From Octopus sinensis (Eukaryota), in the NCBI RefSeq assembly GCF_006345805.1, contig NC_043014.1:54994001-55058000 (forward strand): a DNA stretch of 64,000 nt, read 5' to 3'. Position 1 is the stretch's first letter, and every line of letters begins with the position of its first letter. This document shows, in pieces, positions 14,513 to 33,501 of the stretch. The notes beneath the pieces were generated by a model that made no database searches, was not told the DNA's origin, and saw nothing but the letters and a program-made list of their open reading frames with translations. A program made the translations under genes and the position numbers.

Positions 14513-14724
14513 TTAGCAGTCACTACTCTGTTCTCTTCTAAGTTTGTCCAATTCCTCTTCAACGAGTTTAGCCAGGTCGTATCGCTTCATGTCATGAAGA
14601 ATCTTACGGAAGTTTATTGCAGTGCTGTTCAGTGATGTATTATTCCAGTCGACCAAAACATTTATGCAGGGATCCTGGCTGCTTTCATATCTTCCGACCA
14701 AAGAAAGATCACAGTTCAAATGAC
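14513..14724 (-). CDS. Roco-like gene terminal coding exon (Death domain C-half)
   Basis: Acceptor tttcctcag (phase 1). GHLNCDLSLVGRYESSQDPCINVLVDWNNTSLNSTAINFRKILHDMKRYDLAKLVEEEL matches death-domain PxxxLLxxW...LxxxLxxMxRxD; stop at 14513. AATAAA on the minus strand at 14484-14489 and 14297-14302. Confidence 0.85.
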
Positions 14725-17700
14725 CTGAGGAAAGAAAACAGAACATTGATCAAGAAATATTTTCATATGTGTGTGTGTGTGTAATAAGCAGGAAACAGGT
14801 ATGGTATATAAAGGCGGCGAGCTGGCAGAAACGTTAGCGCGCCGGGCGAAATGCTTAGAGGTATTTCGTCTGCCGTTACATTGTGAGTTCAAATTCCGGC
14901 GAGGTCGACTTTGCCTTTCATCCTTTCGGGGTCGATAAATTAAGTACCAGTTACGCACTGGGGTCGATGTAATCAACTTAATACCTATGTCTGTCCTTGT
15001 TTGTCCCCTTTGTGTTTAGCCCCTTGTGGGTAGTAAAGAAATAGGTATGGTATATAAATAATAATAATAATGAAATTATTGTATACAGTGCTCAGGTGCA
15101 CCACAACTTGTCAAAAGTGTGTATAAAGTATATGCAGTAATGTACAAATGTCTGGAAAGTGAACAGTATATGAGTCAGATACATGCTTGTGTGTATGGAG
15201 GGGAGAAAATCAGTTGTAGTGTTGGCAAATCTCAGGAAGCATGGAAGTTTTGAAGGATGCAGTGCTCCGACAACTAACAACTGATGCCAGCAGTTTGTTT
15301 CATGCTTCGGCAAATCTTAACATGAAAAATGTTTCTGAAAGTCCTGGAAGGAGCTGTGCTGTTTTCTGACTTTGTAAACATGTCCACCTTTTTGAAATTC
15401 TACCATTTGTGGACATGTTTATAAATCCAAACAACAGGACATTTCTGAAAGTCATGGGTAATGTCCAGAATGTCCAAGAAAACCTGCCCCCACCATCACT
15501 TCACACTGACCAGTCAATAGACTGATCACGTGGAACATGTGGTGTTTTGCTCCTGATGTCTGACCATGTAAGCAGGGATTCAGTTTCAAATCTCCACCAC
15601 ACCACAAAGCACAGAAGTCTTAGAAGCAGATGTAAAAGTGTCCAGCCGCAGCAGCAGAGATGGAATTGCCAGGTCCATATTTCAATTTTCTTTAGTGCCA
15701 CCAGCAACAAACATCAAATTGTAACTGCATGCCCAACATGTTAGACATCCCATAAAAACATAAAAAAACCATCTTGTGTTACATCCCCAGCCTCTTTCAT
15801 CCGAGAGTGATATAGAGTAATTCCTCGTCCATCAACTCCGACGTCTGGCAGCTGACTTGGCAGACACCCATAAAATTATCAACCATCGTACAAACAATAA
15901 CTCTGAGCACCTTTTCAAACTCCACCCGTCTAACACCCGTGGACATGTTTACAAAGTCAGAAAACAGCACAGCTCCCATGACTTCAGGAAACATTTTTTC
16001 ACGGTGAGAGTTGCTGAAGCATGGAACAAACTGCCGGCATCAGTTGTAAGTTGTCGGAGCACTGCATCCTTCAAAACTTCCATGCTTTCTGAGATTCGCC
16101 AACACTACACTTGATTTTCTCCCCTCCATACACACACACAAGCATGTATCTTACTCATGCATTGTCCGCTTTCCAGACATTTGTACATTACTGCATGTAC
16201 TCTGACAAGTTGTGGTGCACCTGAGCACCGTATACAATAATTTCATTATTATTTAAAAAATTTTTTTATCCCATTTGGATTTCAAATGTAAATTTTGAGA
16301 GAGAGAGAGAGCAAAGATAGAAAACAAAAGCATCAGAGCTCCCTGCATAAAATGTGTTAAGACTGGCTTAGCCAAAAACGCAGAGCCATGCCAGTGATAA
16401 AGGGATCAATGAACATACATTGAGATTATGCATAACACTAAGGGACAAATATCCCCCCTGCCTTCGGGGAAAAAGTTCTCAAACTTACGAATGAGCCCAA
16501 CCTCCCCTAATATTAACGAAAGAACAAACAGGTTTTGATCCGTATAATTATTCTGCATCAAAATTATTCAGAAGTTTTAAGAAAAAAAGATTTAGCAAGG
16601 GAGATAACTCCAATAAAATGTAGTCGCTCTCCAGTGGGAGAGTCATAACTGGAAGGCCTCTAACTACGTGTCCGCTTGATCAGGGCTGAATTGTGGGCTG
16701 TACAACACCAATATGGCCCTTCCCAATCAGTTAGTTGCAATTCTTCAAGAATAAACAATGAAAATGAAAATATTCGAAAAATAAATAGGCGCAAGAGTGG
16801 CTGTGTGGTAAGTAGCTTGCTAACCAACCACATGGTTCCAGGTTCAGTCCCACTGCATGGCACCTTGGGCAAGTGTCTTCTGCTATAGCCCTGGACCAAC
16901 CAATGCCTTGTGAGTGGATTTGGTAGACGGAAAATGAAAGAAGCTTGTCGTATATATGTATATATATATATGTGTGTGTGTCTGTGTGTGTTTGTCCCGC
17001 TAGCATTGCTTGACAACCGATGCTGGTGTGTTTACATCTCCGTCACTTAGCGGTTCAGCAAAAGAGACCGATAGAATAAGTACTGGGCTTACAAAGAATA
17101 AGTTCCGAGGTCGATTTGCTCGACTAAAGGCGGCGCTCCAGCATGGCCACAGTCAAATGACTGAAACAAGTAAAAGAGAGAGTAAAGAGTAAGAGATTTC
17201 AATGCTTCCAAACCGGAAGGTCTTAGTTTCAAACCCACTGCACAGCACCCTGGACAAGTGTGTTCTACTACAGCCTTTACTGCAACCAAAGACCCTGAAA
17301 CTGAAATAACCCTGTTGTACATACACGTGTGCGTGAGTGTATGAATGTCTGTCTAGACATGGTGTGACAGTTGTAAACGAGTGTCACTGTCATACAAGCA
17401 GTGTCATTCGTTTCCTGTCTTCCTTGGAAACACATTCAACCATGGGGAAATATTAACCTTATCTGGAAACAGGTGAGGGTTAATGAGAGGAAGCACATCA
17501 GGCCATGAAAAGGTCAGCTTTGACAGAGTCAGGGAGACCCTTACAAGCATGGAAAGGAGGACATTTAAAACAACGACAAAGGTGTTGGATGTAGGTTGTA
17601 GGTTCTCTTACCAGCCAGCATTTTCCAGTTGAGACTTGGGTTAGAATTTAGTTCCAGACAGATGTGAAAGAGAATTTTGGAATTCAACTCAAGTACAGAC

Positions 17701-18013
17701 ATTTTTTCAACATCGATCACTTTACCCTGAAAATGGAATAAAAAGAAAGAAAAAAGATGAAAAGGAACTCGAAATAGCAGCGTTCAACATAGCTTCTTTT
17801 TAAATCTTTTGAAAATAACTTTGGCACAGGCCTGGCTTCATGGTTAAGAAGCGTGCTTCCCAGCCATGGGGTTCCAGGCTCAATACCAATGCATGGCATT
17901 TTGGGCAAGTGTCTTCTACTATAGCCTTGGACAGGCCAAAGCCTTGTGAGTGGATTTGGTAGACGGAAACTGAAAGAAGCCCGTCGTGTATGTATGTGTT
18001 AGTATACATATCT

Positions 18014-18046
<33 letters not shown>

Positions 18047-18183
18047 GCGTTAGGAAGGGCATCCAGCTGTAGAAACACTGCCAGATCAGACTGGGCCTGG
18101 TGCAGCCTTCTGGCTTCCCAGACCCCAGTTGAACCGTCCAACCCATGCTAGCATGGAAAGCAGACGTTAAACGATGATGATGA

Positions 18184-18223
<40 letters not shown>

Positions 18224-21200
18224 GTTTTACTTAGGCATAGCGATAGTAATAACTTGGGGTTAGAACTCAATAGATATATGCCTCAGAATAAAGCATTAGT
18301 TGAATACAGAGCATAATAAGAGATTAACTAAATGGTGAGGGAACAAGAAATTATGCAATGGACTGCATTAGCTTACAGCTGTTTCTGCTGTAAGATGCAA
18401 TGCACTCAACCAAGTGCTTGTGCATCACCTTATAGTTTCCATAGGAAAGCAATTATATACATGGAAAAGATCTAAGTAGCGTTTATCCTTCAAACTTTAT
18501 ACCCCATTTCTTATGTATTTTTATATTTTTTAAATTGTGATTGTTTCCATATATATAAATTAACTCTAACACATTGCAGATGCCAGCGCCACCTGACTGG
18601 CGTCCGTGTTGGTGACACGTAAAAGCACCAACCGATCGTGGTCGTTCGCCAGTCTCCTCTCGCCCCTGTGCCGGTGGCACATAAAAAGCACCCACTACAC
18701 TCACGGAGTGGTTGGCATTAGGAAGGGCATCCAGCTGTAGAAACACTGCCAGATCAGACTGGTGCCTGGTGCAGCCTCCTGGCTTCCCAGACCCCAGTCA
18801 AACCGTCCAACCCATGCCAGCATGGAAAGCGGACGTTAAACAATGATGATGATGATGACATTGCAGTCCAAAGACAGCTTAATGACCAAAACAGTAAAGA
18901 ACACACACAGAGAGGAATAACTTACGATTTGCTTCACTTGGGTTTCATTGATGAGATGTGTGCAAAAGATTGGAGATTCATGTTTCCTCTGAGAATGGCA
19001 ACAGTAGATGCACTGTGGGTTGTGGCATCGTCCGTAATACTTGAAGAAGCTGTATGGGAATACAGCCACGCAGACTTGATGAAGTTGTTGGAATATGTGA
19101 AATAGAGTTTCTTCATTGGACTGAGTTGTGATTCTAGAGAAAAGTAAAACGAAAATAAAGGACAGGTCAATATATATATAGACATAAATGTACCATGCAC
19201 CCCTCCACCACACACACATCCTTGGAAGCCCCGTCTTCATTCCGCAGAATGCCAGCTTTCTAAAAATTCCTTCCTTCCGTATGTTTTTGTGCAAACATTT
19301 CCTCCAAATTGTGATCAAACAAGTTGATCTCACAGGTATTGGGATCTAAGAAAGAGAAGAAAATAAAAAGGGTTCTTGTTCAGTTCCACTGTGTGGAACC
19401 TTGGGAAAGTGTCTTTTACTATAGCCATTGCTGACAAATGCCTTGTAAAGGAATTTAGTAGAGAGAGAATGTGTGGAGATCTGTTGTTTGTTTGTTCATA
19501 TGTGTGTGTGTGTGCGTGTGTTTATTTCAAAATGATCTAAACTGAAACCTTCTATAAAAATTTAATATTGATTTATTGGCATTAGGAAGGGCATCCAGCT
19601 GTAGAAACACTGCCAGATCAGACTGGGCCTGGTGCAGCCTCCTGGCTTCCCACACCCCAGTCGAACTGTCCAACCCATGCTAGCATGGAAAGCGGACGTT
19701 AAATGATGATGATGATGATGTCCCAAACACCAGCTTAATGATATAAAGTTATTTTATAAAATTCTCCATTATTTTTTTCAAAATTAATTAAAACAAAACC
19801 AGTGGATTTCTATAGAAATATGGTAACAAAACAGTTAAAGCAATCTTAATTAAAACCTTTCATCAAAGTTTCATGTTAATTTATGCTCTAAATGCCAGCT
19901 CAATAATAAATTCTTCATTATTTTCATAATTAAATGGAGCAAAGAGTATTTTAATAGGAATATGAAAACCAAAGGGTTGAGACACTTTCTAATTATGACT
20001 AAGCCTTTAGCATTCAAACCAGTCACATTCAGCCCAAATATTCAACGTTTTGGGTTCAAACCGTCAAGATCCAGCCACTCACACCTACCCTACAATGTCA
20101 TTCCAAAATATACAATCACATCATTGAAATCTCAAAGCTATGAGATAGTTAAGTTAAGTTAAGTTAATTTTTTGGCTCAAAAAGCAAAAAGCAAGGCCAT
20201 GTAGTTATGTACAGGGTGGTGTTCATGTAAAGAGTTCAGGCCACTTGTGGTCAAGGGAGACTTTGAACCGAGCGGTCATCGGCATCTTCACTATCTCGTC
20301 CGGCAGCTTATTCCATGGATCCGCAACCTGGACGGAGAAAGCCCCTCTCCTTCGATTGAGATGAAATCGTCGCAGATAGAGCTTTGCGGAGCGACCCCGC
20401 AGCCGACGCTCTGGAGCAGGAGTGAAGAACAGCTCTTTCGAGAGGTTACACTTTCTGCTTATGGATTCTGCAGATAATCCATGATTAATTCGAAACAATG
20501 AGAATAAATAAGGATTATATTTGACAGAGTAATCTGGATGCTAAAGGGTTAACGAGAAATTAATTGAATGCAAAAGGTAACTCACTCTGAGGTGATTTTG
20601 ACCTGCTGGGTCTGCCACTGGTATTGGAAGTGAACCATATGTGTTCCGACCATGATGTTGCACTGGGATAATTGGATCTCTTGAGGTAATTCCCAACCGT
20701 ATAAATTTCCAAAGGAAATGACCAGCCTGAGAAAGTCCGTGTGCTGTGCACTGCTGCAGAACTGAATGTAGAGTGAGAAAACATTATGCATCAACGGGTT
20801 CTGCACTTCCATTTGGTAACTGTGCTGCAAACAAGGGATGTAGTATTTGGTGCAGGCGTACTGGCCCGACTCCTTTAAGCTTAATATCACATTGTGGCTC
20901 TCGAGTAACGCAAGGACTGAATGGCTGAAGACATCACTGGGATACAAGTTGTCGACCAGAACCTGTTGGTCCACTATTCCGTTGGGTATTTTATGGTATT
21001 GAGAGAAAGTGTGACTTCTGCTCACTAAAGAAATTGGTTGATATGCAAGCTGAGACATGGAGTTTAAAACGTACTCAATGTTTACATATAAACTATTTCC
21101 TTGTGGTAAAAGAGCAGATTTTCTGGAATTTACTGGAAAATAGAAATAAATAAAAAAAGTTAATATAAATTGGAAAATATATATTCTATTTCTTGTTGTG

Positions 21201-23268
21201 TGCTGAAAAGGTCATTATGTCAATAATAACACACAGTCAGTGCATGTGTTATTGTTGGTGCAATGACCCTCCCAAAACACAAAATTTGTTTCAACACACA
21301 AAATTCACATCAAAAATCTTGCAAACCAGACACAGAAACAAACGAATATTCTACTAATTTAATTTTAATTTTTACACCATTTTGTGAAGAACAGGTTTCC
21401 AGCGGCACCAGTCATGGATTCCCTGTATTTTTCACAGTGAGAATAAGAAGGGAGTATATGTGCAGCTGTAACAGAACAAATATACAAGGTATTTTGGCTT
21501 GGAAACAATGGTTTTTATTGGTTTTCCTCACCAATGTTTACATTTTTCAGTGAAAATCAAAGACAGATGCATATTCATAAATTCAAAAAATGGTTTGCAT
21601 TGAGTTTCGTATTTTACAGAGACATATATCTGTATGAAGATAAACACACACACACACACATACGTATATCATATCTGTTTCCTTGTTTTTATGTTTGCTT
21701 TTCCATGGGTTAGACTAATATATTATTGAAGCACTATTTTAGCAATCATCATCATCATTGTTCGACCGTGGTCGAGACAATGGAATTTACCATGCTACGC
21801 CAGACTTCACGGTCCATCATGGCATTACGGAGGTCCTGTTGCTGGATGCCTGTATCCCTGGAGATTACATCAGGGTAGGAGAGTGTGCGCCCTCTGGTAT
21901 TGCGAGTAGATGGCTTCCAGAGGAGGAGAGTAGAAATTACCTTTTTTTCAGCTCTACAACAATGTCCAGCAAACTGGACTCTCCTACCTTTCACAAGAGA
22001 TGACACAGGTGGTAGTTTCCCATATATTTGCATTTTGGTTGGATGGCGCTTCCACGAGAGATTTTGAGCTCTCATTTTAGCAATGGACACCCCTCACATC
22101 ACCAAACCTTCCTTGTTTCTCAAGTATGAGATCTCCTATTTCTCATGTATTTCAAGGTGTGAAGTAAGCCACACACACACACACACACTTTAAAATGGTG
22201 AAACCTTGCTAAAAATGTGACATTGGAAGAAGACATGGTCGTCCAACTTATTGGATTCTGTTTGACCATCCAACTCATGCCAGCATGGAAAGCAGACAAA
22301 ATGATGACGATGATGATGATGTGGATGATTCTGTTTACATTTTATATGAATAGGCGCAGGAGTGGCTGTGTGGTGAGTAGCTTGCTTGCGAACTACATGG
22401 TTCCGGGCTCAGTCCCACAGCGTGGCACCTTGGGCAAGTGTCTTCTACTATAGCCTCGGCCGACCAATGCCTCGTGAGTGGATTTGGTAGACGGAAACTG
22501 AAAGAAGCCCGTTGTATATATGTATATATATATATATATATATATGCGTGTGTGTGTTTGTGTGTCTGTGTTTGTCCCCCTAGCATTGCTTGACAACCGA
22601 TGCTGGTGTGTTTACGTCCCCGTCACTTAGCGGTTCGGCAAAAGAGACCGATAGAATAAGTACTGGGCTTACAAAAGAATAAGTCCCGGGATCGATTTGC
22701 TCGACTACAAGGCGGTGCTCCAGCATGGCTGCAGTCAAATGACTGAAACAAGTAAAAGAGTAAAAGAGAGTAAAGAGTAATATGTCATCATCGTTGTTGT
22801 ACTGTCCACCTTTCTGTGCTTGGATGGGTCAAATGCATTTCACTGAGGCAAACTTTCTATGGTTGGATGCCCCTCCTCTACCAACCCCCATCTCTTTTCA
22901 AACAAATACTCCACCCCCCACGTAGATATATTAAAATGGAGAAGTTTTTGGTGAAGCAGGGTGTGATGCAGCTTTAAAGGGGTTTGTTGTGTAAGGGCCG
23001 GTCAATGTGAGAAGGTACAAAGTTAACAACAGACGGAAAAAGAAAACAAAGTGACCGCTTGACCTTTGCATTTCTATATTTTGGGGTTATGACACCTTCT
23101 TCAGGACATTTGGATAAAAAGCAAGGAATGGAAAATTTGTTGCTGAAATGTGTGTGGGAGGAAGGAAATATGTATAGACTGGTGTTGCTATAGCAACCAG
23201 TTTGCTAGATGTGGTTCCTTCCTGTTGTTAACGGCCGATCTCAATTTGTTTATAAGGAGGGACTCCAT

Positions 23269-23304
<36 letters not shown>

Positions 23305-26300
23305 GTATCTGATAGGCTTCCCCACAGTTTCCAATTACCAGGGTTCTTTCTCTTGGTGCTGGCTCCAGTCACTGGAATGAAGCCATTGCTAGGGCACCAC
23401 TTTAGAGAGTTTTAATTAATCCTATTCTTTGGTTGGTTCTTACCTCATAATTAAGAACAGAAGCAAAGCAAAATCAATTGAGTGCAAAGGGCTTCATACG
23501 ATATTTTGTTCAACAGACCAATACTGCCTTATCTTCCCATCATGCATTTATACATAGATTGGGTCTCATCCCATAAATAATGCAGGTTTTTTATAATTCT
23601 TTTATTTTTTCAAAATTAAGATAAAGTTCTTTTTTATTCTAAAATATCCTCTCCTTTATTTTCTACAATGCTCTTCCAACTAACTGGTAGACTTGCAAGA
23701 CCCCTCTTCTGGAATTCACTTTTCCGTGATGAAAAATACTCCACCAGTAACTGTTCTGACCTCGTCTACAGAATTCCTATTCAAAAACACAGAGCCATTG
23801 GTCATAATGTCAACAAAGAATGCCAACATCACCACCACAAGTCGGTTCAAGTAAAACATCATAAACAGACAATGTAGAATAAAGTACACACACACACATA
23901 TGCAACAAGCTTCTTGCAGTTTCTATTAACTAAATTTCTTCACCGAGCGAACCAATCCTATGACTGGCACCTGGCAGATGCCAGGACCCCTGGACTGGTG
24001 GTACATAAAAAGCACTATCCGAATCGTGGCCGAAGCCAGTGCCGCCTCGACTGGCTTCCATGCCGGTGGCACGTAAAAAGCACCATCCGAATTGTGGCCA
24101 AAGCCAGTGCCGCCTCGACTGGCTTCCGTGCCGGTGGCACGTAAAATGTACCAATCCGACCATGGACGTTGTCAGCCTCGCCTGGCACATGTGCAGGTGG
24201 CACGTAAAAAGCACCCACTACACTCACGGAGTGGTTGGCGTTAGGAAGGGCATCCAGCTGTAGAAACATTGCCAGATCAGACTGGAGCCTGGTGCAGCCT
24301 TCTGGCTTCCCAGATCCCTGGTCGAACTGTCCAACCCATGCTAGCATGGAGAACGGACGTTAAACGATGATGATGATGAGCATTGGACTTCTTGGGATGG
24401 TCACAAAGTTATTCCATTCTCCCTTGGATTGTTCCCTTCTCTTTCATTTGAGCCCCAATTTTTTCACCATGTATGTCATTTCCCCAGCATCTTAGCAGGC
24501 TTTGATTTCTTGGATACCAAATGGCAATTGTATGGACATCCTTTCTTGCAACCACAAAATACAAGAAGAGCCAGTTTTTCCTTAACCAAGCAGAGTTGTG
24601 TACCTTGCTCAAGAGCACAGCTTACTGTTTCTTGTAGGATAAGCAACCACAGAGAGGTTTCCTACATTGGCTTGTGAAAGACAGGTAACAGAGAATGGTA
24701 AGCAGTGGATTGAGTTAAATACGATCTGTTGAATGGAAAAGTCTGAGCACAACTGTGGGTTTCTTGCATTTTCTGTCTACCAAATCTAACGACATGGATT
24801 TGATTGGCCCAAGGTGCCACGTAGTGGGATCGAACCTGAAGCCATGTTGTTGATAAACATCTTAACATCAAGCCTGCGCCAATCAATGAAAGATGTGAAC
24901 CCAATAAACAGGTGCTTTTAAACAAAAATCCTTGGTCTCTGTTACATCCAAATTGTATTGGATGGTCATGTTGGGACCCTGAGCATCAAAAATGCTGTGA
25001 GTCATTGGCTGGTTTACTGGAAACTTAGAACCAGCAACCTCAATGTTTATAAATTGATAATGATGATGCTGATGATGATAGTAATTGCAATCAAGATTTT
25101 GATTATTATTGCCCTCCTCCTCCTCCTTCTTTAGTTGTATTAATTTAATTAATTAATCTTTAATATTATTACAATGATAAAAGTTAATTGATGAAATTAC
25201 AATAAAATAAGAAATATTTTCCCCACTCCAACTAACGACTTACCTCCAATATAATATTTGAAGGAACTCATTTCACGCACCGTTTGATGAAGATCCTGCT
25301 GAGAAATTTTATCAAAGACTTTGTGAACAGTTTTGAAAAAGTCAGTTGCAATACTTTTGCAGAGACCAAGATGGTAGAGCTTGTGCAGCGCATAAGCCGC
25401 ATGGTAACTCATTGAAATTTCCTTTTGTTTAGCGAGTTCAAAGACAGAATTGACAAATGTGTCACTGTTTTGGTCAGAATTTGAAGGAATAACAATGGGT
25501 TCCACCATTATTTTGTCAATGAAGTAATTGTGTTGATTGCGACATTGTTCACTGTTATCCTGACAGACACATTTCACTTTAATTTGTACCTCTTTTCCAA
25601 CGCAAGACTGAATCGTATGGATGTATCTCTTCAGCATTCGCAGTTCCGCTTGCTTGGATCCTTGCGTAACGCTAGACAGCTGACAGTCCAGCATGATGAA
25701 GAAAATGCTGTTTTTAGTAAAAGTGAGTTTCATGCAATGATGAAAGAAAGACTCGTCTGATGAAGCCAGTAGCTCAAGCGCTATCAGATGCTTCACGTCC
25801 AAATGGTAAAACCAGGATCGTTTACTCCAGGACTCAACAAAAAATGTCCCTCTCTGGGTCCACACACAGGAAGCTTTGAAAGCAGCTGTATCATTATTGA
25901 GATTTGTTTCTGGCATTGGATAATTCTGAGACGTTTTGTGACGGTTCGACTTCAGTCTGTTCACCAGGAAGTTGTAATACACCATGGCAGCAGGGCCACA
26001 CAAGAACACCCTTTTTATTGGACAAATCCTCTTCTGTTCAACACACGGATTGTTTCTATGTTTGAATTTGACGGGTCTTTGAATAATTAGTCGTAGCTCT
26101 GATTCGGTTTCTATTTTCTGGTCAATAACTTTTTTCTGGAGAATAAAAGAAAAGAATTTAATTTAAAAATTGAAGAAAAAAATTAATCAAAAGAAATATT
26201 ATTTTATCTAGAAAAAAAGAAAAAACGATATCAATGTTTTATTCTAAAATTAAATGTTGCATTTCAGTAAAGTCAAATTAGCCAATTTAGTAAAAATATA

Positions 26301-26828
26301 CTCCATTAAATTTATTGGGCTTATTGAGGTATGGCCTGTACACCTGATTACATTTGTGGGAAATTTCCAAAGTTCAATGACAAATGTATTTATTTAAGTT
26401 CTGGAATAATACAAGATTAGTATAACCCTCACATGTGTCCCTAGCTTTCAAAGTTGCTCTCAAAATCAATTAAGTTTTATGACAATAATTAAATAATATG
26501 TTTGATAGGATTTTCGTCAAACACCAAAAATAATTAAATATGTTAACCACCTTACAATATATATATTGTGGAGCGGTTAACAAGAGAGACAGAGAAAGGC
26601 AGAAACAAGGAAAATGCCACTTATATTTGAACACTATACAAATATTCCTTTAAAAAAACTTTTCTTTTAATTTATCTAAATTTAATTATTTAATCGTTAC
26701 AGTTGAAAAGGTCTCAAAATGACCGAAACCGGTACTGAAATGTTCTTTATAAAATTATTTTAGCATTTTCTATCTTGACTTGTTTTTTCATATATATCAA
26801 CTCGTGTGTTCCTTTTCACCCTTATACA

Positions 26829-26880
<52 letters not shown>

Positions 26881-29800
26881 AGAAATATATACACTCACCA
26901 CACTTAGGTCTTGACAAGCAATACCATTTAAAGAGAGAATGAGGTCACCAACTTTTAGCTTCCTGGCGGCATCATTTGATAGCTTGGTTATAAGAAAATA
27001 CTGGAAAAAATAGAAGAAAGAAAAATTACTAAATTTCAAAACTTCCACTTGTCTTCTTTCTACTTTTTTTTTCTATCAGGAGGATTTGCTTTCTGACCAA
27101 TATTTAACCCTTTAGTAATTTAAACCGGCCATATCCGGCCAAAATATTTAATCTGTTTTATGTTCAAACTGACCAGATCCAGGCCCTCACACCTACCCTA
27201 CAATGTTATTCTACATTAAGTAATTACACCATCAAGATCTTGAAGATATGAGATAATGCATGATTAATTCAAATCAATGGGAATCAATAGGGATTATGTT
27301 TGATAGAATAATCTAAACACTAAAGAGTTAATTATAAAAGAGTTCACAGAAGAATTGATGACACAGCAGAGCATCCAGACACTTGTGGAGAAGAAGGCAA
27401 CCCCAGACTGTGTCCAGTCTGCTCTGTAAGGTGGTCGACAAATGAAAGCAGCAGATGCAGCGTGAAGAGGGGCCTAAAGTTTGGTTGAGGACAGGAGAAT
27501 CTCTCCAGAGCTAGTGCTTACTCCCTCAACATCATTTAGTGTCTGCTTTCAATGGTGGCATGGGTTTAATAGTTTGACTGGAACTGGTAAGTGGGAGAGC
27601 TGTAACAGGCTCCAGCTTGGCCTGGTTTCTATGGCTGGATGCTCTTCCTAATACCTGTACGCTAAAAAATGGTAGACGGACAATTCATCAACCGACAGTT
27701 GGCCGAGAGACAACTTACAGACAGGACAATTGACCGATTGGACAATTTGCCAAAAGGACAATATGTCGATAATTTTTAAAAAACAAAGTAAAAATTATGA
27801 AAAAGTTTTATTAGACTTACAAATAAAAGTAATTTATTTATAAAAAGATATTACGCAAAATAGGTCAACATGAAAAAAAAGCACAAAAGGTTTTGTTTGT
27901 CTTACAAATAGAAATACAGAAATCACATACAGGAGTGGCTGTGTGGTAAGTAGCTTGTTTACCAACCACATGGTTCTGGGTTCAGTCCCACTGTGTGGCA
28001 CCTTGGGCAAGTGTCTTTTACTATAGCCTCGGGCCGACCAAAGCCTTGTGAGTGGATTTAGTAGACGGAAACTGAAAGAAGCCTGTCGTATATATATATA
28101 TATATAGCAATTAAGGACAACTACTTAATAAGGAAAACTTAACAAGAAATTGTCAGGTAGATAGCGTGAAAACCTCATAAGAGAAAAAATTTCGAAAATA
28201 ATTATTTCTTATTGAACATATTAATTTATATATAGAGGGCATTATACATACATGCCAGAAGGCATTATACATAAATGCCACACGCTAAGAGGGACAATTA
28301 GTCATTTCTACCAAAAATATTACTAATCCCACCGAATGCAATTTTTCAAAGTAAGACATTTAAAAAATATAGACCTGTATCACAGTGATTTCATACTTAC
28401 GTATTCATCAGCAGGCCTGAATGTATTATAAATAAACAACGACCTTGCCCCGCTTAAGCCGATCAGCTAACTGATCAACATCAACGACGCACATGGGTGA
28501 GTTTACATATATTACATCCGGATAAATGGCAAACTTTTACGAATTGCATTTCGGGAGAGGAAAAGTTTTTTCGGAATAAAAATTTAGCAATTAAGGACAA
28601 CTACTTAATAAGGAAAACTTAACAAGAAATTGTCAGGTAGATAGCGCTTAAGCGGGGCAAGGTCGTTGTTTATTTATAATACATTCAGGCCTGCTGATGA
28701 ATACGTAAGTATGAAATCACTGTGATACAGGTCTATATTTTTTTAAATGTCTTACTTTGAAAAATTGCATTCGGTGGGATTAGTAATATTTTTGGTAGAA
28801 ATGACTAATTGTCCCTCTTAGCGTGTGGCATTTATGTATAATGCCTTCTGGCATGCATGTATAATGCCCTCTATATATAAATTATATATATATATATATA
28901 TAATGTGTGTGTTTGTGTGTCTGTGTTTGTCCCCTTAGCATTGCTTGACAACCGATGCTGGTGTGTTTAGGTCCCCGTCACTTAGCAGTTCGGCAAAAAA
29001 AGAGACCGATAGAATAAGTACAGGGCTTACAAAAGAATAAGTCCTGGGGTCGAGTTGCTCGATTAAAGGCGGTACTCCAGCATGGCCGCAGTCAAATGAC
29101 TGAAACAAGTAAAAGAGTAAAAGAGTATACAATTATGGACACCTGTCCTTAAAAATTCCAACCCAGCTTCATCATTGTAATGAAGAACAAGTTTTAAGTC
29201 TTTCCTTTGGGTGAATTTATTTTTTGCTTTTCCTTGCCACTTCAATCCCTGAAATGGCCAGTTTTATTACCATTTCGGTTTGGGACTGTTCTACCTTAAC
29301 CCTTTCATTACCATATTTATTTTGAGATGTTCTGTGTTTCTTTCAATTATTTTAAATCATCATCATCATCATCATCATCATTTAGCGTCCGTTTTCCATG
29401 CTAGCATGGGTTGGACGGTTCAACTGGGGTCTGTGAAGCCAGAAGGCTGCATCAGGCCCAGTCTGATCTGGCAGTGTTTCTACGGCTGGATGCCCTTCCT
29501 AACGCCAACAACTCCGTGAGTGTAGTGGGTGCTTTTTACGTGCCACCCGCACAGGAGCCAGACGGAGCTGGCAAACGGCCACGAACGGATGGTGCTTTGG
29601 GCAAACGGCCATGAACGGATGGTGCTTTTACGTGCCACCGGCACGGAGGCCAGACAGGGCGGCGCTGGCAATGGCCACGAATGGATGGTGCTTTTTACGC
29701 GTCACCGGCACGGAGGCCAGTCGGGGCAGCGCTGGCAACGGCCACGATCGGATGGTTTAAATATAACAAAGAAATTAGTAAAATAACTTAGTTATCATTC

Positions 29801-32123
29801 AGCTAGTGTTTGGAACATAAATTGTGACTAAGGTTTGATAGAAGATTTTAATTCAAAACTTATGAAAACAAGACATTTGTACTACAGAGCCAGAAGTGGT
29901 TTCAGCCGGGTTGGTAACGAAAGGGTTAAGCTTCTCAATTTGGATATGTTAGGGTGATGGATGTTAATTCTTCTACTGAAGGCGTGGTGCCAACCTCCTA
30001 GGGAGTTGTTGGTTTCCGGGAGATCATTGAGAACTCTGTGGTAGCACTACCATAAAGAAAAGTCAGACAGTGGTCGTTGATGTCTCCCACATTGCATGAT
30101 TCCTACCCGAGTACACACAAAATAAGACAGGAATTCCTCCAAAATTTCATCAATTTGAACACTTAAAGAATGAAGGAATTGTTCAAACAGTATCTACGTC
30201 ATTAGGTGGCACAAAAGGTAACGCTTGCAGCTGTTTTATAATAAATGCATTTTCTCCTTAGGTAATAAACCACATTTGTAAACCTGTGCCCTGTATCTCA
30301 TAGCTTTGAGATTTCAGTGATGTGACTGTTTATTTTTAGAACGACATTGTAGGATAGGTGTGATAGGCTGAATCTGGCCAGTTTGAACATAAAATAGGTA
30401 GAATATTTGGGCCGGATGTGGCCAGTTTAAACCAGCCAAAGGGTTAAAATTCAGAACAAGCTACAAAGGACTAGGAAACGCACAGGTTTACTCACCATAG
30501 AAGTGTTCACCGAGTTTTTAGGAACCAACTGAAAAAAAGAAGAAGAAAAGAGATTGGTTAGATATGGATGGATGGAAGCACTCCGTCGGTTACGACGACG
30601 AGGGTTCCGGTTGATCCGAATCAGCGGAACAGCCTGCTCATGAAATTAACGTGTAAGTGGCTGAGCACTCCACAGACACGTGTACCCTTCACGTAGTTCT
30701 CGGGGATATTCAGCATGACACAGAGAGTGACAAGGCCGGCCCCTTGAAATACAGGTACAACAGAAACAGGAAGTAAGAGAAAGTTGTGGTGAAAGAGTAC
30801 AGCAAGGATCACCACCATCCCCTGCCGGAGCCTCGTGGAGCTTTAGGTGTTTTCGCTCAATAAACACTCACAATGCCCCGTCTGGGAATCGAAACCGCGA
30901 TCCTATGACCGCGAGTCCGCTGCCCTAATCACTGGGCCATTGATATGAAATAATATATGAATAACCTTTACTGCTACAAACACAAGGCCTGAAATTTTAG
31001 GAGCAGGGGTGAGTCAATTACATCAATCTCAGGGTGCAACAGGTGTATTCCATCGACCCAGAAAGGGTGAAAGATAAAGTTGACCTTGGCAGAGTTTGAA
31101 CTCAGAACTTAAAAACAGATGAAATGCCACTAAGCAGTTTGCCCAGAATGCTGACAGCTCTGCCGGCTCACTGCTGTGGTAAAGAATATAATGATTTACT
31201 AAAAGGACATATTGGAGAATGGTATCCAAATGAAAACTAACCAAAACCAATGACAGTGGCCACCACTTATGAAAGAAGCCACGTGTCGGCACAAGGGGGC
31301 CAAGGACTTATTCGTTTCCTCCCTGGAAGGATGCAAAAGTAAAGCAGAACTTGGTGGAATGCGAAATGAGAAACGTAAAGAGAAATAACAACAAGTTTGG
31401 CAGTGAAATATTTACCGAGGAAAGAAGGACTTCATAGACAAATCCAAATTTGCCGCTACTGGATCTCTTCAATATCACAGTTTTTGGTTTGGCATCCCAC
31501 TGGATGCTATCCGGATTCTTGAAGACAGCATCTTTCAGTGAGACTGTATCAGTGGCGACGGGTCTTGGCACCGGTTGACAATGACTGCTACCATCAGCAT
31601 CCAGCAGCAGAGAATTCATGCTGTTTGTGCTGCTGCTGTTGCTGCTGCTGCACACACTCGAGTTCAAACTCATCCTCTGAATATTATCATTGGAATCATG
31701 ACAGAGAGATCGGTACGCCTCCAAGAGGACAACGGTGCCGGACGACAGACTCAGCACACTCTCAACCTCCATTGGAGTCTTCAAGTGACGGATGTCAATT
31801 TCGTCGATTTTTGTGATGTAGTGGTATTTGGTCAACTCTCGTGACAAGCAGGTGTCTTTCACCTGCGTCACCTTGGCGATGTTTCCACTGGAACATTTCT
31901 GGGAAACAGAAAGAAAGAAAAAAATTGGATGAGTGAATTAGAATGCAATTAAAGAATACGTAGACGTAGGAGTGGCTGTGTGGTAAGTAGCTTGCTTACG
32001 AACCACATGGTTCCGGGTTCAGTCCCACTGCGTGGCACCTTGGGCAAGTGTCTTCTACTACAGCCTCGGGCCGACCAAAGCCTTGTGAGTGGATTTGGTA
32101 GACGGAAACTGAAAGAAGCCTGT

Positions 32124-32178
<55 letters not shown>

Positions 32179-33501
32179 ATATGTTTGTCCCCCTAGCATT
32201 GCTTGACAACCGATGCTGGTGTGTTTACGTCCCCATCACCTAGCGGTTCGGCAAAAAAGACCGATAGAATAAGTACTGGGCTTACAAAGAATAAGTCCCG
32301 GGGTCGAGTTGCTCGATTAAAGGCGGTGCTCCAGCATGGCCGCAGTCAAATGACTGAAACAAGTAAAAGAGTAAAGAGTAAGAGTAATACATCTAGGAGA
32401 CACTCATGCACACACACACACACACGTCATGAACACCTGCCAAGGTGGGCCAAAAGTCAAGAAGTATAAAAATACAGTTGGTGCAACAGCTGAAATCGCC
32501 AGGGTATATATATCCACAGACTGCAATATTCAGTCAGACCTTGTGTACACACACACACACACAGACACACACCAAACATACAAAACAGATTTGTAATGCC
32601 AGAATCGGTATTATGAGGTGAGTATAAGGGCACTGGAGAAGGGATTCCAGGAACTCTCCAATGGGACTAAAATGCTGCCAAAGTTCCATATTTTTACTTG
32701 TTACATTTTAGAAGTCAGAAAGTGCTCCAGCTGGACCAGTCACAGCCCAATGACTAAGACCAGTAAAAGAAAAGAATAACAACTGCACCATCACCATCAT
32801 CATCATCTAAAGCCAGTTTCCCATTGCACAAGTGCATCAGATTCCAGTGTCAGCCCTGGCATGGGTTCTGCGGCTGGATGCTGCCCTTCCTAATGCCAAC
32901 CACTTCACAAAGTGTGGACTAGATGCTTTTATACATCGTCGCCTTACTGGCACCTGTGCCGGTGGCATGTGTAAAAGATTCGAGCGAGGTCGTTGCCAGT
33001 ACCGCCTGACTGGCCCCCATGCCGGTGGCATGTAAAAAGCACCCACTACACCCTCGGAGTGGTTGGCGTTAGGAAGGGCATCCAGCTGTAGAAACCCTAC
33101 CAGATAAGATTGGAGCCTGGTGCAGCCATTTGGTTCGCCAGCCCTCAGTCAAAATCGTCCAACCCATGCCAGCATGGAAAGCGGACGTTAAACGGTGATG
33201 ATGATGATGATGATGATGATGATCCCTATTGAGGTTGTTATGCAGCTCACAAGACTAGAAACCCCGAGAGAAAAGGGGTCAGTATTAGGCTGTGAAAAAG
33301 GGGGAGAGAGTAAGAGGGATAGTGAGAGGCATCAAAGATATGTTAAAAAAAACCCCCAAAAAACCCAATTCTTACTTGAATAATTATGCTGAAACCCAAT
33401 TTGCCATCAGCCCTTCGTGGAACAGGAATCTTACAAGGTTTACCAGAATCAATAATGTCCTCATCCAGCCTAAAAAGCGGTTCGTCTTCTGCCATGCCCA
33501 T
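14513..33501 (-). CDS. Multi-exon gene: PDZ-PDZ-degenerate ROC-COR-Death domain protein (Roco-like), 858 aa
   Basis: Join of 33501-33376, 31898-31416, 27000-26899, 26135-25244, 21024-20586, 19133-18926, 17726-17612 and 14724-14513 = 2577 nt. All introns are GT..AG, phases match (0,0,0,1,2,0,1), and there is no internal stop. Domain motifs run across the exon junctions. Confidence 0.85.
14813..15050 (+). mobile_element. tRNA-derived SINE family B (MetaSINE-like central domain), representative copy
   Basis: GGCGGCGAGCTGGCAGAA...GAGTTCAAATTCC head and GCCTTTCATCCTTTCGGGGTCGATAAA..AGTACCAG domain. Other copies at ~52798-53035 (+), ~51010-51242 (-), and decayed ones at 2830-3020, 5140-5770, 6760-6930, 7210-7385, 30975-31170, 40835-40950, 55690-55910 and 56660-57060. 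Confidence 0.8.
15790..16250 (+). mobile_element. CR1-clade LINE 3' fragment (family 1)
   Basis: LFKLHPSNTRGHVYKVRKQHSSHDFRKHFFTVRVAEAWNKLPASVV matches the CR1 C-terminal motif. Other copies at ~4545-4880 (+) and ~15070-15390 (-). Confidence 0.85.
17612..17726 (-). CDS. Roco-like gene coding exon 7 (Death domain N-half)
   Basis: Acceptor ttccattttcag, donor G|gtaag. GKVIDVEKMSVLELNSKILFHICLELNSNPSLNWKMLA matches death-domain helices 1-2 (LCxxLD...WKxLA). Not in the ORF track. Confidence 0.85.
18926..19133 (-). CDS. Roco-like gene coding exon 6 (COR C-terminal, Cys/His-rich)
   Basis: Acceptor ttttctctag (phase 2), donor ATC|gtaagt. ITTQSNEETLFHIFQQLHQVCVAVFPYSFFKYYGRCHNPQCIYCCH... Confidence 0.8.
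20000..20552. mobile_element. TTAA-type MITE (family B) interrupted by a CR1-like LINE 3' fragment
   Basis: Same family as the intact copy at 27104-27331. LINE insert at 20148-20471 with 5-bp TSD AGATA (20143-20147 and 20472-20476). Confidence 0.8.
20586..21024 (-). CDS. Roco-like gene coding exon 5 (COR-like)
   Basis: Acceptor tttctttag (phase 1), donor GA|gtgagt. NGIVDQQVL...LLESHNVILSL...KYYIPCLQ...FLRLVISF resembles COR GxLxxxxL, LLxxF and YxIPxxL motifs. Confidence 0.85.
21747..22135 (-). mobile_element. RTE-like LINE 3' fragment
   Basis: LSWKRHPTKMQIYGKLPPVSSLVKGRRVQFAGHCCR...RGRTLSYPDVISRD...MMDREVWR; (atg)n tail. Confidence 0.85.
22358..22780 (+). mobile_element. CORE-type SINE family A, representative full copy
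   Basis: tRNA-like A/B boxes, CORE-like accttgggcaagt, internal (TA)n(TG)n and a (gagtaaaa)n tail. Other copies at ~12742-13126, 16793-17190, 31968-32380, 43075-43230, 43289-43705, 58324-58705 and 60547-60955 (+), and 46008-46425, 47930-48310 and 57140-57640 (-). Confidence 0.9.
23557..23790 (-). mobile_element. Mariner transposase C-terminal remnant with TIR-like end
   Basis: Minus frame LLVEYFSSRKSEFQKRGLASLPVSWKSIVENKGEDILE* resembles mariner FFxxKxxxFYxxGIxxLxxRWxxxVxxxGxY. attgggtctcatcccataaataatgc resembles a mariner TIR. Confidence 0.75.
23985..24378 (+). mobile_element. RTE-tailed short repeat family C, representative copy with tandem ~66-bp modules
   Basis: Tail ggagtggttggcgttaggaagggcatccagctgtagaaac...ggacgttaaac(gat)n, shared with the RTE LINE. 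Other copies at ~1815-2060, 6990-7165 and 29357-29757 (-), and 18040-18185, 18575-18855, 19580-19720, 32950-33220, 37890-38215, 50760-50990 and 58855-59150 (+). Confidence 0.85.
25244..26135 (-). CDS. Roco-like gene coding exon 4 (PDZ2 end, degenerate ROC domain, COR start)
   Basis: 892-nt open exon; acceptor ttttattctccag, donor G|gtaagt. ELRLIIQRP ends PDZ2. KRVFLCGPAAMVYYNFLVNRL lies at the P-loop position. FTKNSIFFIMLD...RYIHTIQSCVGKEVQIKVKCVCQD resembles ROC FLTxxAIYLLVFD...WLxxI...VILVGTHxD. Confidence 0.85.
26695..26742 (+). ncRNA. Type I minimal hammerhead ribozyme, U3-A8 variant
   Basis: cag-TTGAAAA-ggtc[tcaaaat]gacc-GAAA-ccgg-TA-ctg. Stems I and II are intact, stem III is palindromic (ACCGGT), and the core has C3->U and G8->A. 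Predicted cleavage 26734|26735. Confidence 0.7.
26899..27000 (-). CDS. Roco-like gene coding exon 3 (PDZ2 core)
   Basis: Acceptor ttttttccag, donor GTG|gtgagt. YFLITKLSNDAARKLKVGDLILSLNGIACQDLSV contains the typical PDZ LxxGDxILxxNG motif. Confidence 0.9.
27104..27331. mobile_element. TTAA-type MITE family B, intact copy
   Basis: ttaaccctttag...ctaaagagttaa-like termini. Related copies at ~30290-30448, ~36053-36285, ~41208-41645 (containing a family A MITE at 41335-41564) and ~57830-58085. Confidence 0.75.
28371..28418 (-). ncRNA. Type I hammerhead ribozyme (identical inverted copy, sense to the Roco-like pre-mRNA)
   Basis: Exact reverse complement of 28687-28734; predicted cleavage 28378|28377. 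Confidence 0.9.
28687..28734 (+). ncRNA. Type I hammerhead ribozyme, canonical core
   Basis: aggcctg-CTGATGA-atac[gtaa]gtat-GAAA-tca[ctg]tga-TA-caggtct. Stem I is 7 bp (one G-U), stem II is 4 bp with a GNRA loop, stem III is short and near-palindromic. Predicted cleavage 28727|28728. Confidence 0.9.
29296..29929. mobile_element. TTAA MITE (family A) split by an RTE-tailed repeat insertion
   Basis: MITE halves at 29296-29357 and 29756-29929; 7-bp TSD TTTAAAT at 29351-29357 and 29756-29762. Confidence 0.85.
30570..30945 (-). mobile_element. tRNA-derived SINE family D
   Basis: Minus head atggcccagtgattagggcagcggactcgcggtc...ggtttcgattcccagac. A related copy with a different tail lies at ~35062-35348 (-). 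Confidence 0.75.
31416..31898 (-). CDS. Roco-like gene coding exon 2 (PDZ1 C-half, Ser-rich linker, PDZ2 start)
   Basis: Acceptor tttctgtttcccag, donor TCG|gtaaat. KCSSGNIAKVTQVK...VVLLEAYR...SSSNSSST...KTVILKRSSSGKFGFVYEVLLSS. Confidence 0.9.
33376..33501 (-). CDS. Roco-like gene coding exon 1 (start; N-terminal part of PDZ1)
   Basis: Acceptor tcctttcag at 33532; in-frame TGA upstream of the ATG at 33501. MGMAEDEPLFRLDEDIIDSGKPCKIPVPRRADGKLGFSIIIQ ends at donor gtaag; GKLGF is the PDZ carboxylate-binding loop. Not in the supplied ORF track. Confidence 0.85.

What the first reader, a model, noticed from the sequence alone, without database searches (positions are those of the whole stretch)
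14513..33501. Roco-like protein with an unusual PDZ-PDZ-ROC-COR-Death architecture
Seen: an 858-aa open, phase-consistent 8-exon model with two PDZ domains (GKLGF and GKFGF loops), a ROC/COR-like middle and a C-terminal death domain. Known: characterised Roco proteins (LRRK1/2, DAPK1, MFHAS1) put LRR, ankyrin or kinase domains before ROC; DAPK1 has ROC-COR-death but no PDZ. I do not recall a PDZ-fronted, kinase-less Roco. Inference: a membrane- or receptor-anchored scaffold linking PDZ-ligand receptors to death-domain signalling (innate immunity or apoptosis), possibly lineage-restricted. A small extra exon between 25244 and 21024, or between 18926 and 17726, cannot be excluded.
Basis: partly seen in the sequence, partly recalled or inferred. 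Interest (0 to 1): 0.8.

Follow-up and report, generated by a model that had tools for sequence, protein, structure and literature searches.

The report
PDZ-fronted dead-GTPase Roco death-domain scaffold
This is a real, expressed octopus gene for a protein with two PDZ domains, a Roc-COR core like that of LRRK2 whose GTP-binding motifs are all lost, and a death domain; it is so far seen only in cephalopods and abalone and is annotated as uncharacterised.

Summary
The gene is real. It lies on the minus strand from 33501 to 14513 and has 9 GT-AG exons, not 8. It encodes 905 aa, not 858, identical to XP_029647517.1 (Octopus sinensis LOC115221472, "uncharacterized protein").

- **PDZ and death domains:** family profiles hit only PDZ and death domains among solved structures.
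- **Roc-COR core (aa 284-800):** no sequence method detects it (Pfam, HMM against PDB sequences, hhalign). Fold-level evidence supports it. Foldseek's first 28 hits for a low-confidence AF2 model are all Roc-COR proteins. The ESM Atlas model aligns over 420-441 residues (TM 0.61-0.65) to Roc-COR-A-COR-B clusters. Language-model neighbours are all Roc/COR clusters.
- **GTP-binding motifs:** G1, G3 and G4 are lost in every lineage, so this is probably a pseudo-GTPase.
- **Constraint:** dN/dS is 0.11 overall and 0.17 in the Roc-like part.
- **Distribution:** single copy in octopus. Found only in Octopus, Argonauta, two unnamed transcript clusters and Haliotis.

Roc-COR-Death without a kinase is common in molluscs. 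The new features are the PDZ front and the dead Roc. A scaffold function is inferred, not shown. The only earlier scan note concerns an intronic hammerhead element, not this gene.

The parts
33376..33501 (-). Exon 1 (coding part), aa 1-42. Contains the start ATG at 33501 and the start of PDZ1 with the GKLGF carboxylate-binding loop.
   Evidence: Canonical GT donor after 33376. Translation identical to P0004. RNA-like contigs extend about 281 nt upstream of exon 2, which fits 126 nt of coding sequence plus a 5'UTR.
31416..31898 (-). Exon 2, aa 43-203. Rest of PDZ1, a Ser-rich linker, and the start of PDZ2 (GKFGF).
   Evidence: AG/GT borders. Covered end to end by contigs in X1, X16, X2 and X5; joint 30528>31416 seen in 4 runs. 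The PDZ1 part of the family profile hits PSD-95 and LIMK2 PDZ domains.
30496..30528 (-). Exon 3, aa 204-214.
   Evidence: Found by matching P0001/P0004. Joints 27000>30496 and 30528>31416 have CT..AC ends (GT..AG on the minus strand) in all 4 runs. 100% conserved in O. bimaculoides.
26899..27000 (-). Exon 4, aa 215-248. Middle of PDZ2 (KLKVGDLILSLNG).
   Evidence: Pfam PDZ, PDZ_6 and PDZ_2 weak hits. Contig pieces are contiguous with exons 3 and 5.
25244..26135 (-). Exon 5, aa 249-545. Last strand of PDZ2, the Roc-like pseudo-GTPase domain (aa ~284-490) and the first COR-A-like helices.
   Evidence: The AF2 model has Ras-like b1-a1-b2-b3-a2-b4-a3-b5-a4-b6-a5 order. VIA gives Z 12.8, rmsd 3.2 A over 158 aa to LRRK2 Roc 1330-1518. 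G1, G3 and G4 motifs are absent. phmmer finds only 3 clusters in 1.84e9 representatives.
20586..21132 (-). Exon 6, aa 546-727. COR-A-like helices and the COR-B-like sheet.
   Evidence: Borders from P0004 identity. The Atlas model aligns aa 284-800 to Roc-COR-A-COR-B clusters at TM 0.61-0.65. The COR-only model has C. tepidum COR as its top 6 Foldseek hits and VIA Z 8.5 to 3dpu_A 782-918.
18926..19133 (-). Exon 7, aa 728-797. Long COR-B-like helix and a conserved Cys cluster (C764, C769, C772, C785).
   Evidence: The cysteines are invariant in family alignments. dN = 0 over aa 771-815 between two Octopus species. The cysteines line up with the CxxC...C of MFHAS1 homologues in a MAFFT profile alignment, with no statistical support.
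17612..17726 (-). Exon 8, aa 798-835. Linker and first helices of the death domain.
   Evidence: AG/GT borders and phase. The family death-domain profile hits NRADD, p75NTR and IRAK death domains.
14513..14724 (-). Exon 9, aa 836-905 plus TAA stop. Rest of the death domain.
   Evidence: Pfam Death E 0.02 on this piece alone. Death is above the Pfam cut-off in orthologues P0005, P0006, P0010, P0011, P0012 and P0014.

Best explanation
This is a single-copy, expressed, selectively constrained mollusc gene. In Octopus sinensis it is LOC115221472, with 9 exons and 905 aa.

The domain order is:
- PDZ1 (aa ~20-105)
- Ser-rich linker
- PDZ2 (~176-270)
- Roc-like domain (~284-490)
- COR-like domain (~491-770) with a conserved Cys cluster
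- death domain (~816-895)

The middle is a very diverged Roc-COR tandem of the Roco family (LRRK1/2, DAPK1, MFHAS1, bacterial Roco). Its phosphate, Mg and guanine contacts (G1, G3, G4) were lost before cephalopods and abalone split. The Roc domain is therefore most likely a nucleotide-free pseudo-GTPase kept as a structural module.

Inferred mechanism: the protein is a non-enzymatic adaptor. The well-conserved, canonical PDZ1, and perhaps PDZ2, dock on C-terminal tails of membrane proteins. The Roc-COR core gives a rigid, possibly dimeric platform. The death domain, closest to the p75NTR/NRADD and IRAK/MyD88 types, recruits death-domain partners.

Shown: gene structure, expression, domain identities, motif loss, purifying selection and distribution. 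Inferred: lack of nucleotide binding, dimerisation, ligands and pathway.
For: - **Gene model:** the translation is identical to XP_029647517.1.
- **Splicing and expression:** spliced contigs occur in 4 runs of 3 studies. Full-length uninterrupted ORFs of 976-993 aa lie on 3.5-4.2 kb transcript contigs of two other species clusters.
- **PDZ1 and PDZ2:** the family profile hits only PDZ domains in PDB sequences. Pfam PDZ is above cut-off in Haliotis and other orthologues.
- **Death domain:** NRADD E 1e-8, p75NTR 8e-8, then IRAK3/4 and MyD88.
- **Roc-COR, Foldseek:** ranks 1-28 are all Roc-COR proteins (3dpu_A E 2e-8 over 496 columns; COR-only 3dpt_A E 2.5e-5).
- **Roc-COR, VIA:** Z 12.8 to the LRRK2 Roc domain.
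- **Roc-COR, ESM Atlas:** the Atlas model aligns at TM 0.61-0.65 over 420-441 of 517 residues to Roc-COR-A-COR-B clusters and DAPK1. All ten top feature hits are Roc/COR clusters scoring 0.90-0.92.
- **Motif loss:** G1, G3 and G4 are lost in all lineages.
- **Constraint:** dN/dS is 0.106 overall, 0.165 in the Roc-like part, 0.083 in the COR-like part, 0.069 in the death domain and 0.039 in PDZ1.
- **Copy number:** single copy in the genome.
- **Mollusc context:** Roc-COR is shuffled with Death, TIR and LRR domains in Aplysia (PMC9334734) and in the octopus MFHAS1 homologue.
Against: - No sequence-level method finds Roc or COR. Pfam gives nothing at E<=1. The family HMM against PDB sequences gives only junk at E 0.6 or worse. 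hhalign against a 21-sequence MFHAS1 alignment gives only the death domain at E 0.04, and Roc-Roc at P 0.08. Pfam COR-A rings at 4 other loci of this genome but not here.
- Both AF2 models are of low confidence (mean pLDDT 45 and 44). The Atlas model is modest (pLDDT 0.58).
- COR-B on its own is tied with common alpha/beta folds (Z 7.5-8.5).
- Absence of nucleotide binding is read from motifs only.
- No partner, tissue or phenotype is known. The dimer test gave no answer.
Confidence: 0.65

Rival explanations
1. The Roc-like domain still binds and perhaps hydrolyses a nucleotide in a non-canonical way, so the protein is a regulated Roco switch rather than a static scaffold.
For: The G-domain fold is retained. 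The switch-II-like block ESFFHH..FTK.S(I/L)F is among the best conserved stretches of the family and is under purifying selection.
Against: There is no P-loop Lys or Ser/Thr in any lineage (GPAAMVYY, GSGAGTYF, GNAANHLA). DxxG is replaced by ELLA or ELFV. The THxD/NKxD position is deleted. In the model the b1-a1 loop is only about 3 residues long.
Confidence: 0.1
2. The middle region is not descended from Roc-COR. It would be a generic Rossmann/Ras-like alpha/beta domain followed by unrelated helical and alpha/beta domains, and the fold searches pick Roco proteins only because of domain order and size.
For: All sequence-profile tests fail. The models are of low confidence. COR-B scores are tied with unrelated folds.
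Against: Two different predictors and a language-model embedding all point to Roc-COR and nothing else. The Atlas alignment covers 420-441 of 517 residues in one rigid superposition. COR-only entries are the top hits for the COR-only model. Profile alignments place the b1, switch II, b4, a3 and b5 blocks and the COR-B F..F.RL block at the equivalent positions.
Confidence: 0.1
3. The locus is an annotation artefact or a decaying gene, with unrelated exons chained together.
For: Nothing beyond the weak Pfam scores in the O. sinensis protein itself.
Against: Spliced contigs span exons 2-5 and have the length of the full mRNA. Nine conserved exons rebuild the O. bimaculoides protein exactly. dN/dS is 0.11. 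The same architecture sits in single ORFs on transcript contigs of other species and in Haliotis.
Confidence: 0.02

Closest known systems
Mollusc MFHAS1/MASL1 homologues (LRR-Roc-COR-A-COR-B-Death), e.g. Octopus P0015
   Same: Kinase-less Roco with Roc-COR followed by a C-terminal death domain. A WP/FP motif and a Cys cluster after the COR-B helix line up in a profile alignment.
   Different: MFHAS1 has N-terminal LRRs instead of two PDZ domains. It keeps GxxxxGKT, DFGG and THAD, and is found by Pfam Roc, COR-A and COR-B. Sequence similarity to our family is not significant, so descent from it is only a lead.
DAPK1 (kinase-ankyrin-Roc-COR-Death)
   Same: Roc-COR-Death order. The Atlas model aligns aa 283-897 co-linearly to a DAPK1 C-terminal cluster.
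   Different: DAPK1 has a kinase, a calmodulin site and ankyrin repeats at the front and a functional P-loop (established knowledge). Here there is no kinase, there are PDZ domains, and the G motifs are dead.
LRRK1/LRRK2 and bacterial Roco (C. tepidum, M. barkeri)
   Same: Best structural matches of aa 284-800.
   Different: Those are active GTPases with LRR, ankyrin, kinase or WD40 partners. None has PDZ or death domains.
PseudoGTPases (e.g. p190RhoGAP pG1/pG2, CENP-M; from general knowledge)
   Same: A G-domain fold kept while the nucleotide-binding motifs are lost, and used as a structural or interaction module.
   Different: None of these is a Roc domain in tandem with COR. No paper combining 'pseudoGTPase' and 'Roco' was found.
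PDZ plus death-fold scaffolds such as CARMA/CARD11 (CARD-CC-PDZ-SH3-GUK; general knowledge, PMC6156466 listed)
   Same: A PDZ module and a death-fold module combined in one adaptor.
   Different: Different order and different death-fold class, and no Roc-COR core.

Membership tests
Roco family | Roc domain with a Ras-like G-domain fold | tested here: met
   Secondary-structure order is b1-a1-b2-b3-a2-b4-a3-b5-a4-b6-a5. VIA gives Z 12.8, rmsd 3.2 A over 158 aa to LRRK2 Roc, with Rabs at Z ~12. The model is of low confidence (pLDDT 50-74 in this part).
Roco family | COR domain directly C-terminal to Roc (tandem) | tested here: met
   Foldseek ranks 1-28 are Roc-COR tandems aligned over ~500 columns, and COR-only 3dpt_A scores E 2.5e-5. 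The Atlas model aligns at TM 0.61-0.65 over 420-441 aa to Roc-COR-A-COR-B clusters. COR alone is marginal.
Roco family | Functional GTP-binding motifs G1 GxxxxGK[ST], G3 DxxG, G4 [NT][KH]xD | tested here: not met
   G1 reads GPAAMVYY, GSGAGTYF or GNAANHLA. G3 reads ELLA or ELFV. The G4 position is deleted relative to THAD of MFHAS1 homologues.
Roco family | Recognised by Pfam Roc (PF08477), COR-A (PF16095) and COR-B (PF25497) | tested here: not met
   No hit at E<=1 in any of 9 family members. COR-A searched across the genome hits 4 other loci only.
PDZ domain | PDZ profile match and carboxylate-binding loop | tested here: met
   The family profile hits only PDZ domains, for both PDZ1 (PSD-95, LIMK2) and PDZ2 (tamalin, CYTIP, INAD, syntenin) at E 1e-4 to 1e-2. 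Pfam PDZ is above cut-off in P0003, P0006, P0010, P0012 and P0014. GKLG is invariant in PDZ1. The PDZ2 loop is variable.
Death domain (PF00531) | Death-domain profile match | tested here: met
   Pfam Death scores 25.5-44.5 bits against a cut-off of 22.6 in P0005, P0006, P0010, P0011, P0012 and P0014. The family profile against PDB gives NRADD 1.2e-8 and p75NTR 7.7e-8. The O. sinensis protein alone falls below HMMER's filters.
PseudoGTPase | No nucleotide binding or hydrolysis | not testable with these tools
   Inferred from motif loss only. A biochemical assay is needed.
MFHAS1 orthology or descent | Significant sequence relationship to the MFHAS1 Roc-COR-Death region | tested here: inconclusive
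   hhalign finds only the death domain at E 0.04, and Roc-Roc at P 0.08. Congruent blocks and the Cys cluster align in MAFFT profile alignments without statistical support.

The most novel reading that the evidence does not exclude
This is the first natural Roco protein in which Roc has become a nucleotide-free pseudo-GTPase. Under purifying selection for several hundred million years, the Roc-COR tandem would serve purely as a structural or dimerising core that couples PDZ-bound membrane receptors to death-domain (p75NTR/IRAK/MyD88-type) signalling in molluscs. It would show what Roc-COR does when GTP cycling is removed.
Probability: 0.45. Interest if true: 0.65.

Novelty: new variant of a known kind. 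Interest (0 to 1): 0.55.

Why it matters
Roc-COR is the disease-relevant core of LRRK2, and how GTP cycling relates to its dimerisation and scaffolding is still debated. A naturally GTPase-dead Roc-COR that has stayed conserved would separate the structural role of the tandem from its switch role, and would give a tractable comparison protein.

It also adds a PDZ-fronted architecture to the known habit of molluscs of combining Roc-COR with Death, TIR and LRR modules (PMC9334734). It is a candidate adaptor for cephalopod innate-immune, apoptotic or neuronal death-domain signalling.

It is also a practical warning. Standard annotation (Pfam, and the UniProt name 'PDZ domain-containing protein') misses the Roc-COR core entirely.

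Tried and rejected
- **Pfam** on single exons and on nine full-length family members found no Roc or COR.
- **phmmer and family HMM against PDB sequences** for the middle region gave nothing or junk.
- **Pfam COR-A across the whole genome** hit four other loci, not this one.
- **hhalign of the family against a 21-sequence MFHAS1 alignment**, whole and domain by domain, found only the death domain at E 0.04. The Roc-Roc comparison gave P 0.08, no better than the mismatched domain pairs.
- **AF2 of aa 284-800 and of aa 488-800** with 6-7 sequences gave low pLDDT (45 and 44). I used these models only for fold searches.
- **The COR-only model** gave Foldseek E-values of 1e-3 to 2e-2 and a VIA Z of 8.5 tied with common alpha/beta folds. 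It is weak on its own.
- **Complex prediction** on two copies of aa 488-800 returned no answer (score 0.00, partner fold uncertain). This is evidence neither for nor against dimerisation.
- **Searches for more relatives** with the family alignment and with the Haliotis Roc-COR-Death region found only Argonauta, Haliotis and transcript clusters.
- **A paralogue in the octopus genome** was sought and none was found.
- **Literature searches** for the architecture, for 'pseudoGTPase' with 'Roco', and for the locus name found nothing relevant.
- in alignments A3 and A4 I cut the Haliotis sequence at residue 560, which removed its b1/P-loop stretch. The Haliotis P-loop reading therefore comes from A2.
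- **Species of the transcript clusters:** I could not name the species behind P0006 and P0011. Only SRA run numbers are given.


Full report
**1. The observation**

The region holds a minus-strand animal gene. Open frames with PDZ-like and death-domain-like translations were visible at once.

I chained GT-AG exons by hand. I then ran an exhaustive phmmer of the largest exon (aa 249-545) against 1.84 billion cluster representatives. It returned only three clusters. The best of them is a 905-aa protein, 100% identical over that exon.

Cluster look-up named the proteins:
- XP_029647517.1, 'uncharacterized protein LOC115221472' of Octopus sinensis (P0004)
- the O. vulgaris copy (P0001)
- the O. 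bimaculoides orthologue (P0005), which UniProt calls 'PDZ domain-containing protein'

Guided by these, the window gives nine exons, all with GT-AG borders:

| Exon | Window coordinates (minus strand) |
|---|---|
| 1 | 33501-33376 |
| 2 | 31898-31416 |
| 3 | 30528-30496 |
| 4 | 27000-26899 |
| 5 | 26135-25244 |
| 6 | 21132-20586 |
| 7 | 19133-18926 |
| 8 | 17726-17612 |
| 9 | 14724-14513 |

Their translation is identical to P0004 over all 905 residues.

It lacks the 33-nt micro-exon 3. It starts exon 6 at 21024, 108 nt too late. It also misplaces the junction between exons 6 and 7. The extra exons it suspected in two other introns do not exist.

**2. Expression and constraint**

Twenty public runs from nine studies hold at least half of the sampled words of exon 5.

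I laid four of them (three studies) on window 26000-31999. In each run one contig of 2.7-3.2 kb lies on exon 2, the micro-exon, exon 4 and the start of exon 5. The contig coordinates are contiguous across these pieces. The joints 30528>31416 and 27000>30496 have GT..AG ends on the minus strand. The contig length fits a 2718-nt coding sequence plus UTRs. The runs are only guessed to be RNA, but spliced contigs can hardly be anything else.

The same nine exons are found one-to-one in O. bimaculoides and rebuild its protein exactly.

Nei-Gojobori dN/dS between the two species:

| Region | dN/dS |
|---|---|
| whole protein | 0.106 |
| PDZ1 | 0.039 |
| PDZ2 | 0.265 |
| Roc-like | 0.165 |
| COR-like | 0.083 |
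| aa 771-815 | 0 |
| death domain | 0.069 |

Every part is under purifying selection. The gene is single copy: a distant family member used as a probe hits only this locus in the genome.

**3. Relatives**

The family members found are:
- three Octopus species
- Argonauta hians (923 aa, 71-74% identical)
- two clusters of transcript contigs from unnamed species (976 and 993 aa, about 35% identical; uninterrupted ORFs on 3.5-4.2 kb contigs in about 30 runs)
- Haliotis rubra, H. asinina and H. rufescens (812-1208 aa, about 25% identical)

All full-length members share the same order of parts. Nothing outside molluscs was found. The word-indexed searches are not exhaustive, and the exhaustive search used only one octopus exon.

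**4. The end domains**

*PDZ.* Pfam PDZ is weak in octopus but above cut-off in Haliotis (two stretches) and in other orthologues. A family profile of the N-terminal 270 residues hits only PDZ domains among PDB sequences. The first part hits PSD-95 and LIMK2. The second part hits tamalin, CYTIP, INAD, MAGI1, syntenin and syntrophin. GKLG in PDZ1 is invariant, while the PDZ2 loop varies.

*Death domain.* Pfam Death is above cut-off in six orthologues. The family profile hits NRADD (E 1.2e-8) and p75NTR (7.7e-8), then IRAK3/4, THOC1, MyD88, ankyrin and UNC5 death domains.

**5. The middle, aa 284-800**

Sequence methods see nothing:
- Pfam has no Roc, Ras or COR hit at E<=1 in nine proteins.
- The family HMM against PDB sequences gives nothing real.
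- Pfam COR-A rings at four other loci of the genome but not here.
- hhalign against 21 MFHAS1 homologues aligns only the death domain (E 0.04). Its second alignment puts the post-switch-II, b4, a3 and b5 block on the equivalent MFHAS1 block, but at E 0.48.
- Domain-by-domain hhalign is no better for matching pairs than for mismatched ones.

Fold-level and embedding evidence is consistent and specific:
- **AF2 model of aa 284-800.** Mean pLDDT is 45, and 50-74 in the Roc part. The Ras-like strand and helix order is complete.
- **Foldseek against 350,542 PDB chains.** Ranks 1-28 are all Roc-COR proteins: C. tepidum Roc-COR 3dpu_A at E 2e-8 over 496 columns, then LRRK1, LRRK2, M. barkeri Roco2 and the isolated COR domain 3dpt_A at 2.5e-5. 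Rab GTPases come only after these.
- **VIA-align.** Model residues 1-207 match LRRK2 Roc 1330-1518 at Z 12.8, rmsd 3.2 A over 158 residues, tied with Rabs at Z ~12.
- **COR-only model** (pLDDT 44). Its six best Foldseek hits are all C. tepidum COR entries, at E 1e-3 to 2e-2. VIA gives Z 8.5 to COR-B 782-918, tied with common alpha/beta folds. This is weak alone.
- **ESM Atlas, independent of my models.** The Atlas's own model of this protein aligns aa 284-800 over 420-441 residues at TM 0.61-0.65 to clusters carrying Roc, COR-A and COR-B, and to a DAPK1 C-terminal cluster. The ten nearest named clusters by language-model features all carry Roc/COR (0.90-0.92, 171-185 shared features). Several are molluscan and carry Death as well.

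I rate Roc-COR descent at about 0.85.

**6. A dead G domain**

The family alignment and a profile alignment to MFHAS1 Roc domains show the state of the nucleotide-binding motifs:

| Motif | Canonical form | This family |
|---|---|---|
| G1 (after b1, RVF(L/M/I)xG) | GxxxxGK[ST] | GPAAMVYY (octopods), GSGAGTYF (second cephalopod group), GNAANHLA (Haliotis) |
| G3 | DxxG | ELLA, ELMA or ELFV |
| G4 | THAD in MFHAS1 | falls in a four-residue gap |

The block after switch II, ESFFHH..FTK.S(I/L)F..M.D, is the best conserved stretch and lies opposite HH.FLT.EAL..LVFD of MFHAS1.

The loss predates the split of cephalopods and gastropods, yet the domain stays constrained. This is the signature of a pseudo-GTPase. 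Absence of binding is inferred, not measured.

**7. Context and origin**

The octopus MFHAS1 homologue (found through COR-A at G000:C9, locus L002; P0015) is LRR-Roc-COR-A-COR-B-Death with intact motifs. Many mollusc MFHAS1 homologues carry Death. In Aplysia, Roc-COR is combined with TIR, Death, LRR, EF-hand and Mbt domains (PMC9334734).

A kinase-less Roc-COR-Death is therefore not unusual in molluscs. The PDZ front and the dead Roc are the unusual features.

A MAFFT profile alignment of the COR-B ends lines up several features with MFHAS1:
- the F..F.RL strand
- a conserved Trp
- the FP/WP motif
- three cysteines of the family's invariant cluster (C764, C769, C785)

This suggests descent from an MFHAS1-Death-like gene, but it has no statistical support.

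No cluster with PDZ and Roc appears among the Atlas neighbours, and no paper describes the architecture or the locus.

**8. Mechanism**

Best reading: a non-enzymatic adaptor. PDZ1, which is canonical and the most constrained part, and perhaps PDZ2 tether it to C-terminal tails of membrane proteins. The Roc-COR core acts as a rigid and, by analogy with Roco proteins, possibly dimeric platform. The death domain recruits death-fold partners of the p75NTR/NRADD or IRAK/MyD88 type.

Only the domain identities are shown; everything else is inferred. A homodimer prediction of the COR region gave no answer.

**9. Verdict**

This is a real gene that is already annotated but uncharacterised. The Roco assignment holds at fold level only, and the GTPase is dead.

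It is a new variant of a known kind. Interest is moderate (0.55).

Noticed in passing
window 28116-28604 (intron 3 of the gene): RNA-like contigs lie circularly permuted. In X2 a 464-nt contig has positions 314-464 on 28116-28266 and positions 1-313 on 28282-28595, and X5 shows similar pieces. This fits a circular or tandem RNA from the hammerhead/retrozyme-like element that another note of the scan (s1-114487) places at 28105-28884.
   Followed up: partly
window 349-654, minus strand: An ORF containing CKYGEKCYRKNPNHLREYRHP, which looks like a PBZ-type zinc finger (APLF/CHFR-like, from memory). It is probably an exon of the neighbouring gene downstream.
   Followed up: no
window ~8300-12200: A long minisatellite whose unit reads YAEESQII in one + frame and TPLHRLFV on the other strand. 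It gives ORFs of up to 414 aa that are almost certainly not genes.
   Followed up: no
window 40227-40532, minus strand: A 101-aa ORF resembling the C-terminal part of a Tc1/mariner transposase (…NAPIHTAKVV…WPAQSPDLN…EHLW…), judged by eye.
   Followed up: no
L002 = G000:C9:40289216-40292713: The octopus MFHAS1 homologue is LRR-Roc-COR-A-COR-B-Death (P0015, 1168 aa). At least 873 codons are uninterrupted in the genome. The death domain is absent from human MFHAS1 as I recall but is widespread in mollusc homologues.
   Followed up: partly
window 31416-31898 (exon 2, Ser-rich linker): Transcript contigs carry a 3-nt length difference and two base differences (31554 G>A, 31702 C>T) relative to the window. 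This is probably an allelic Ser-repeat polymorphism.
   Followed up: no
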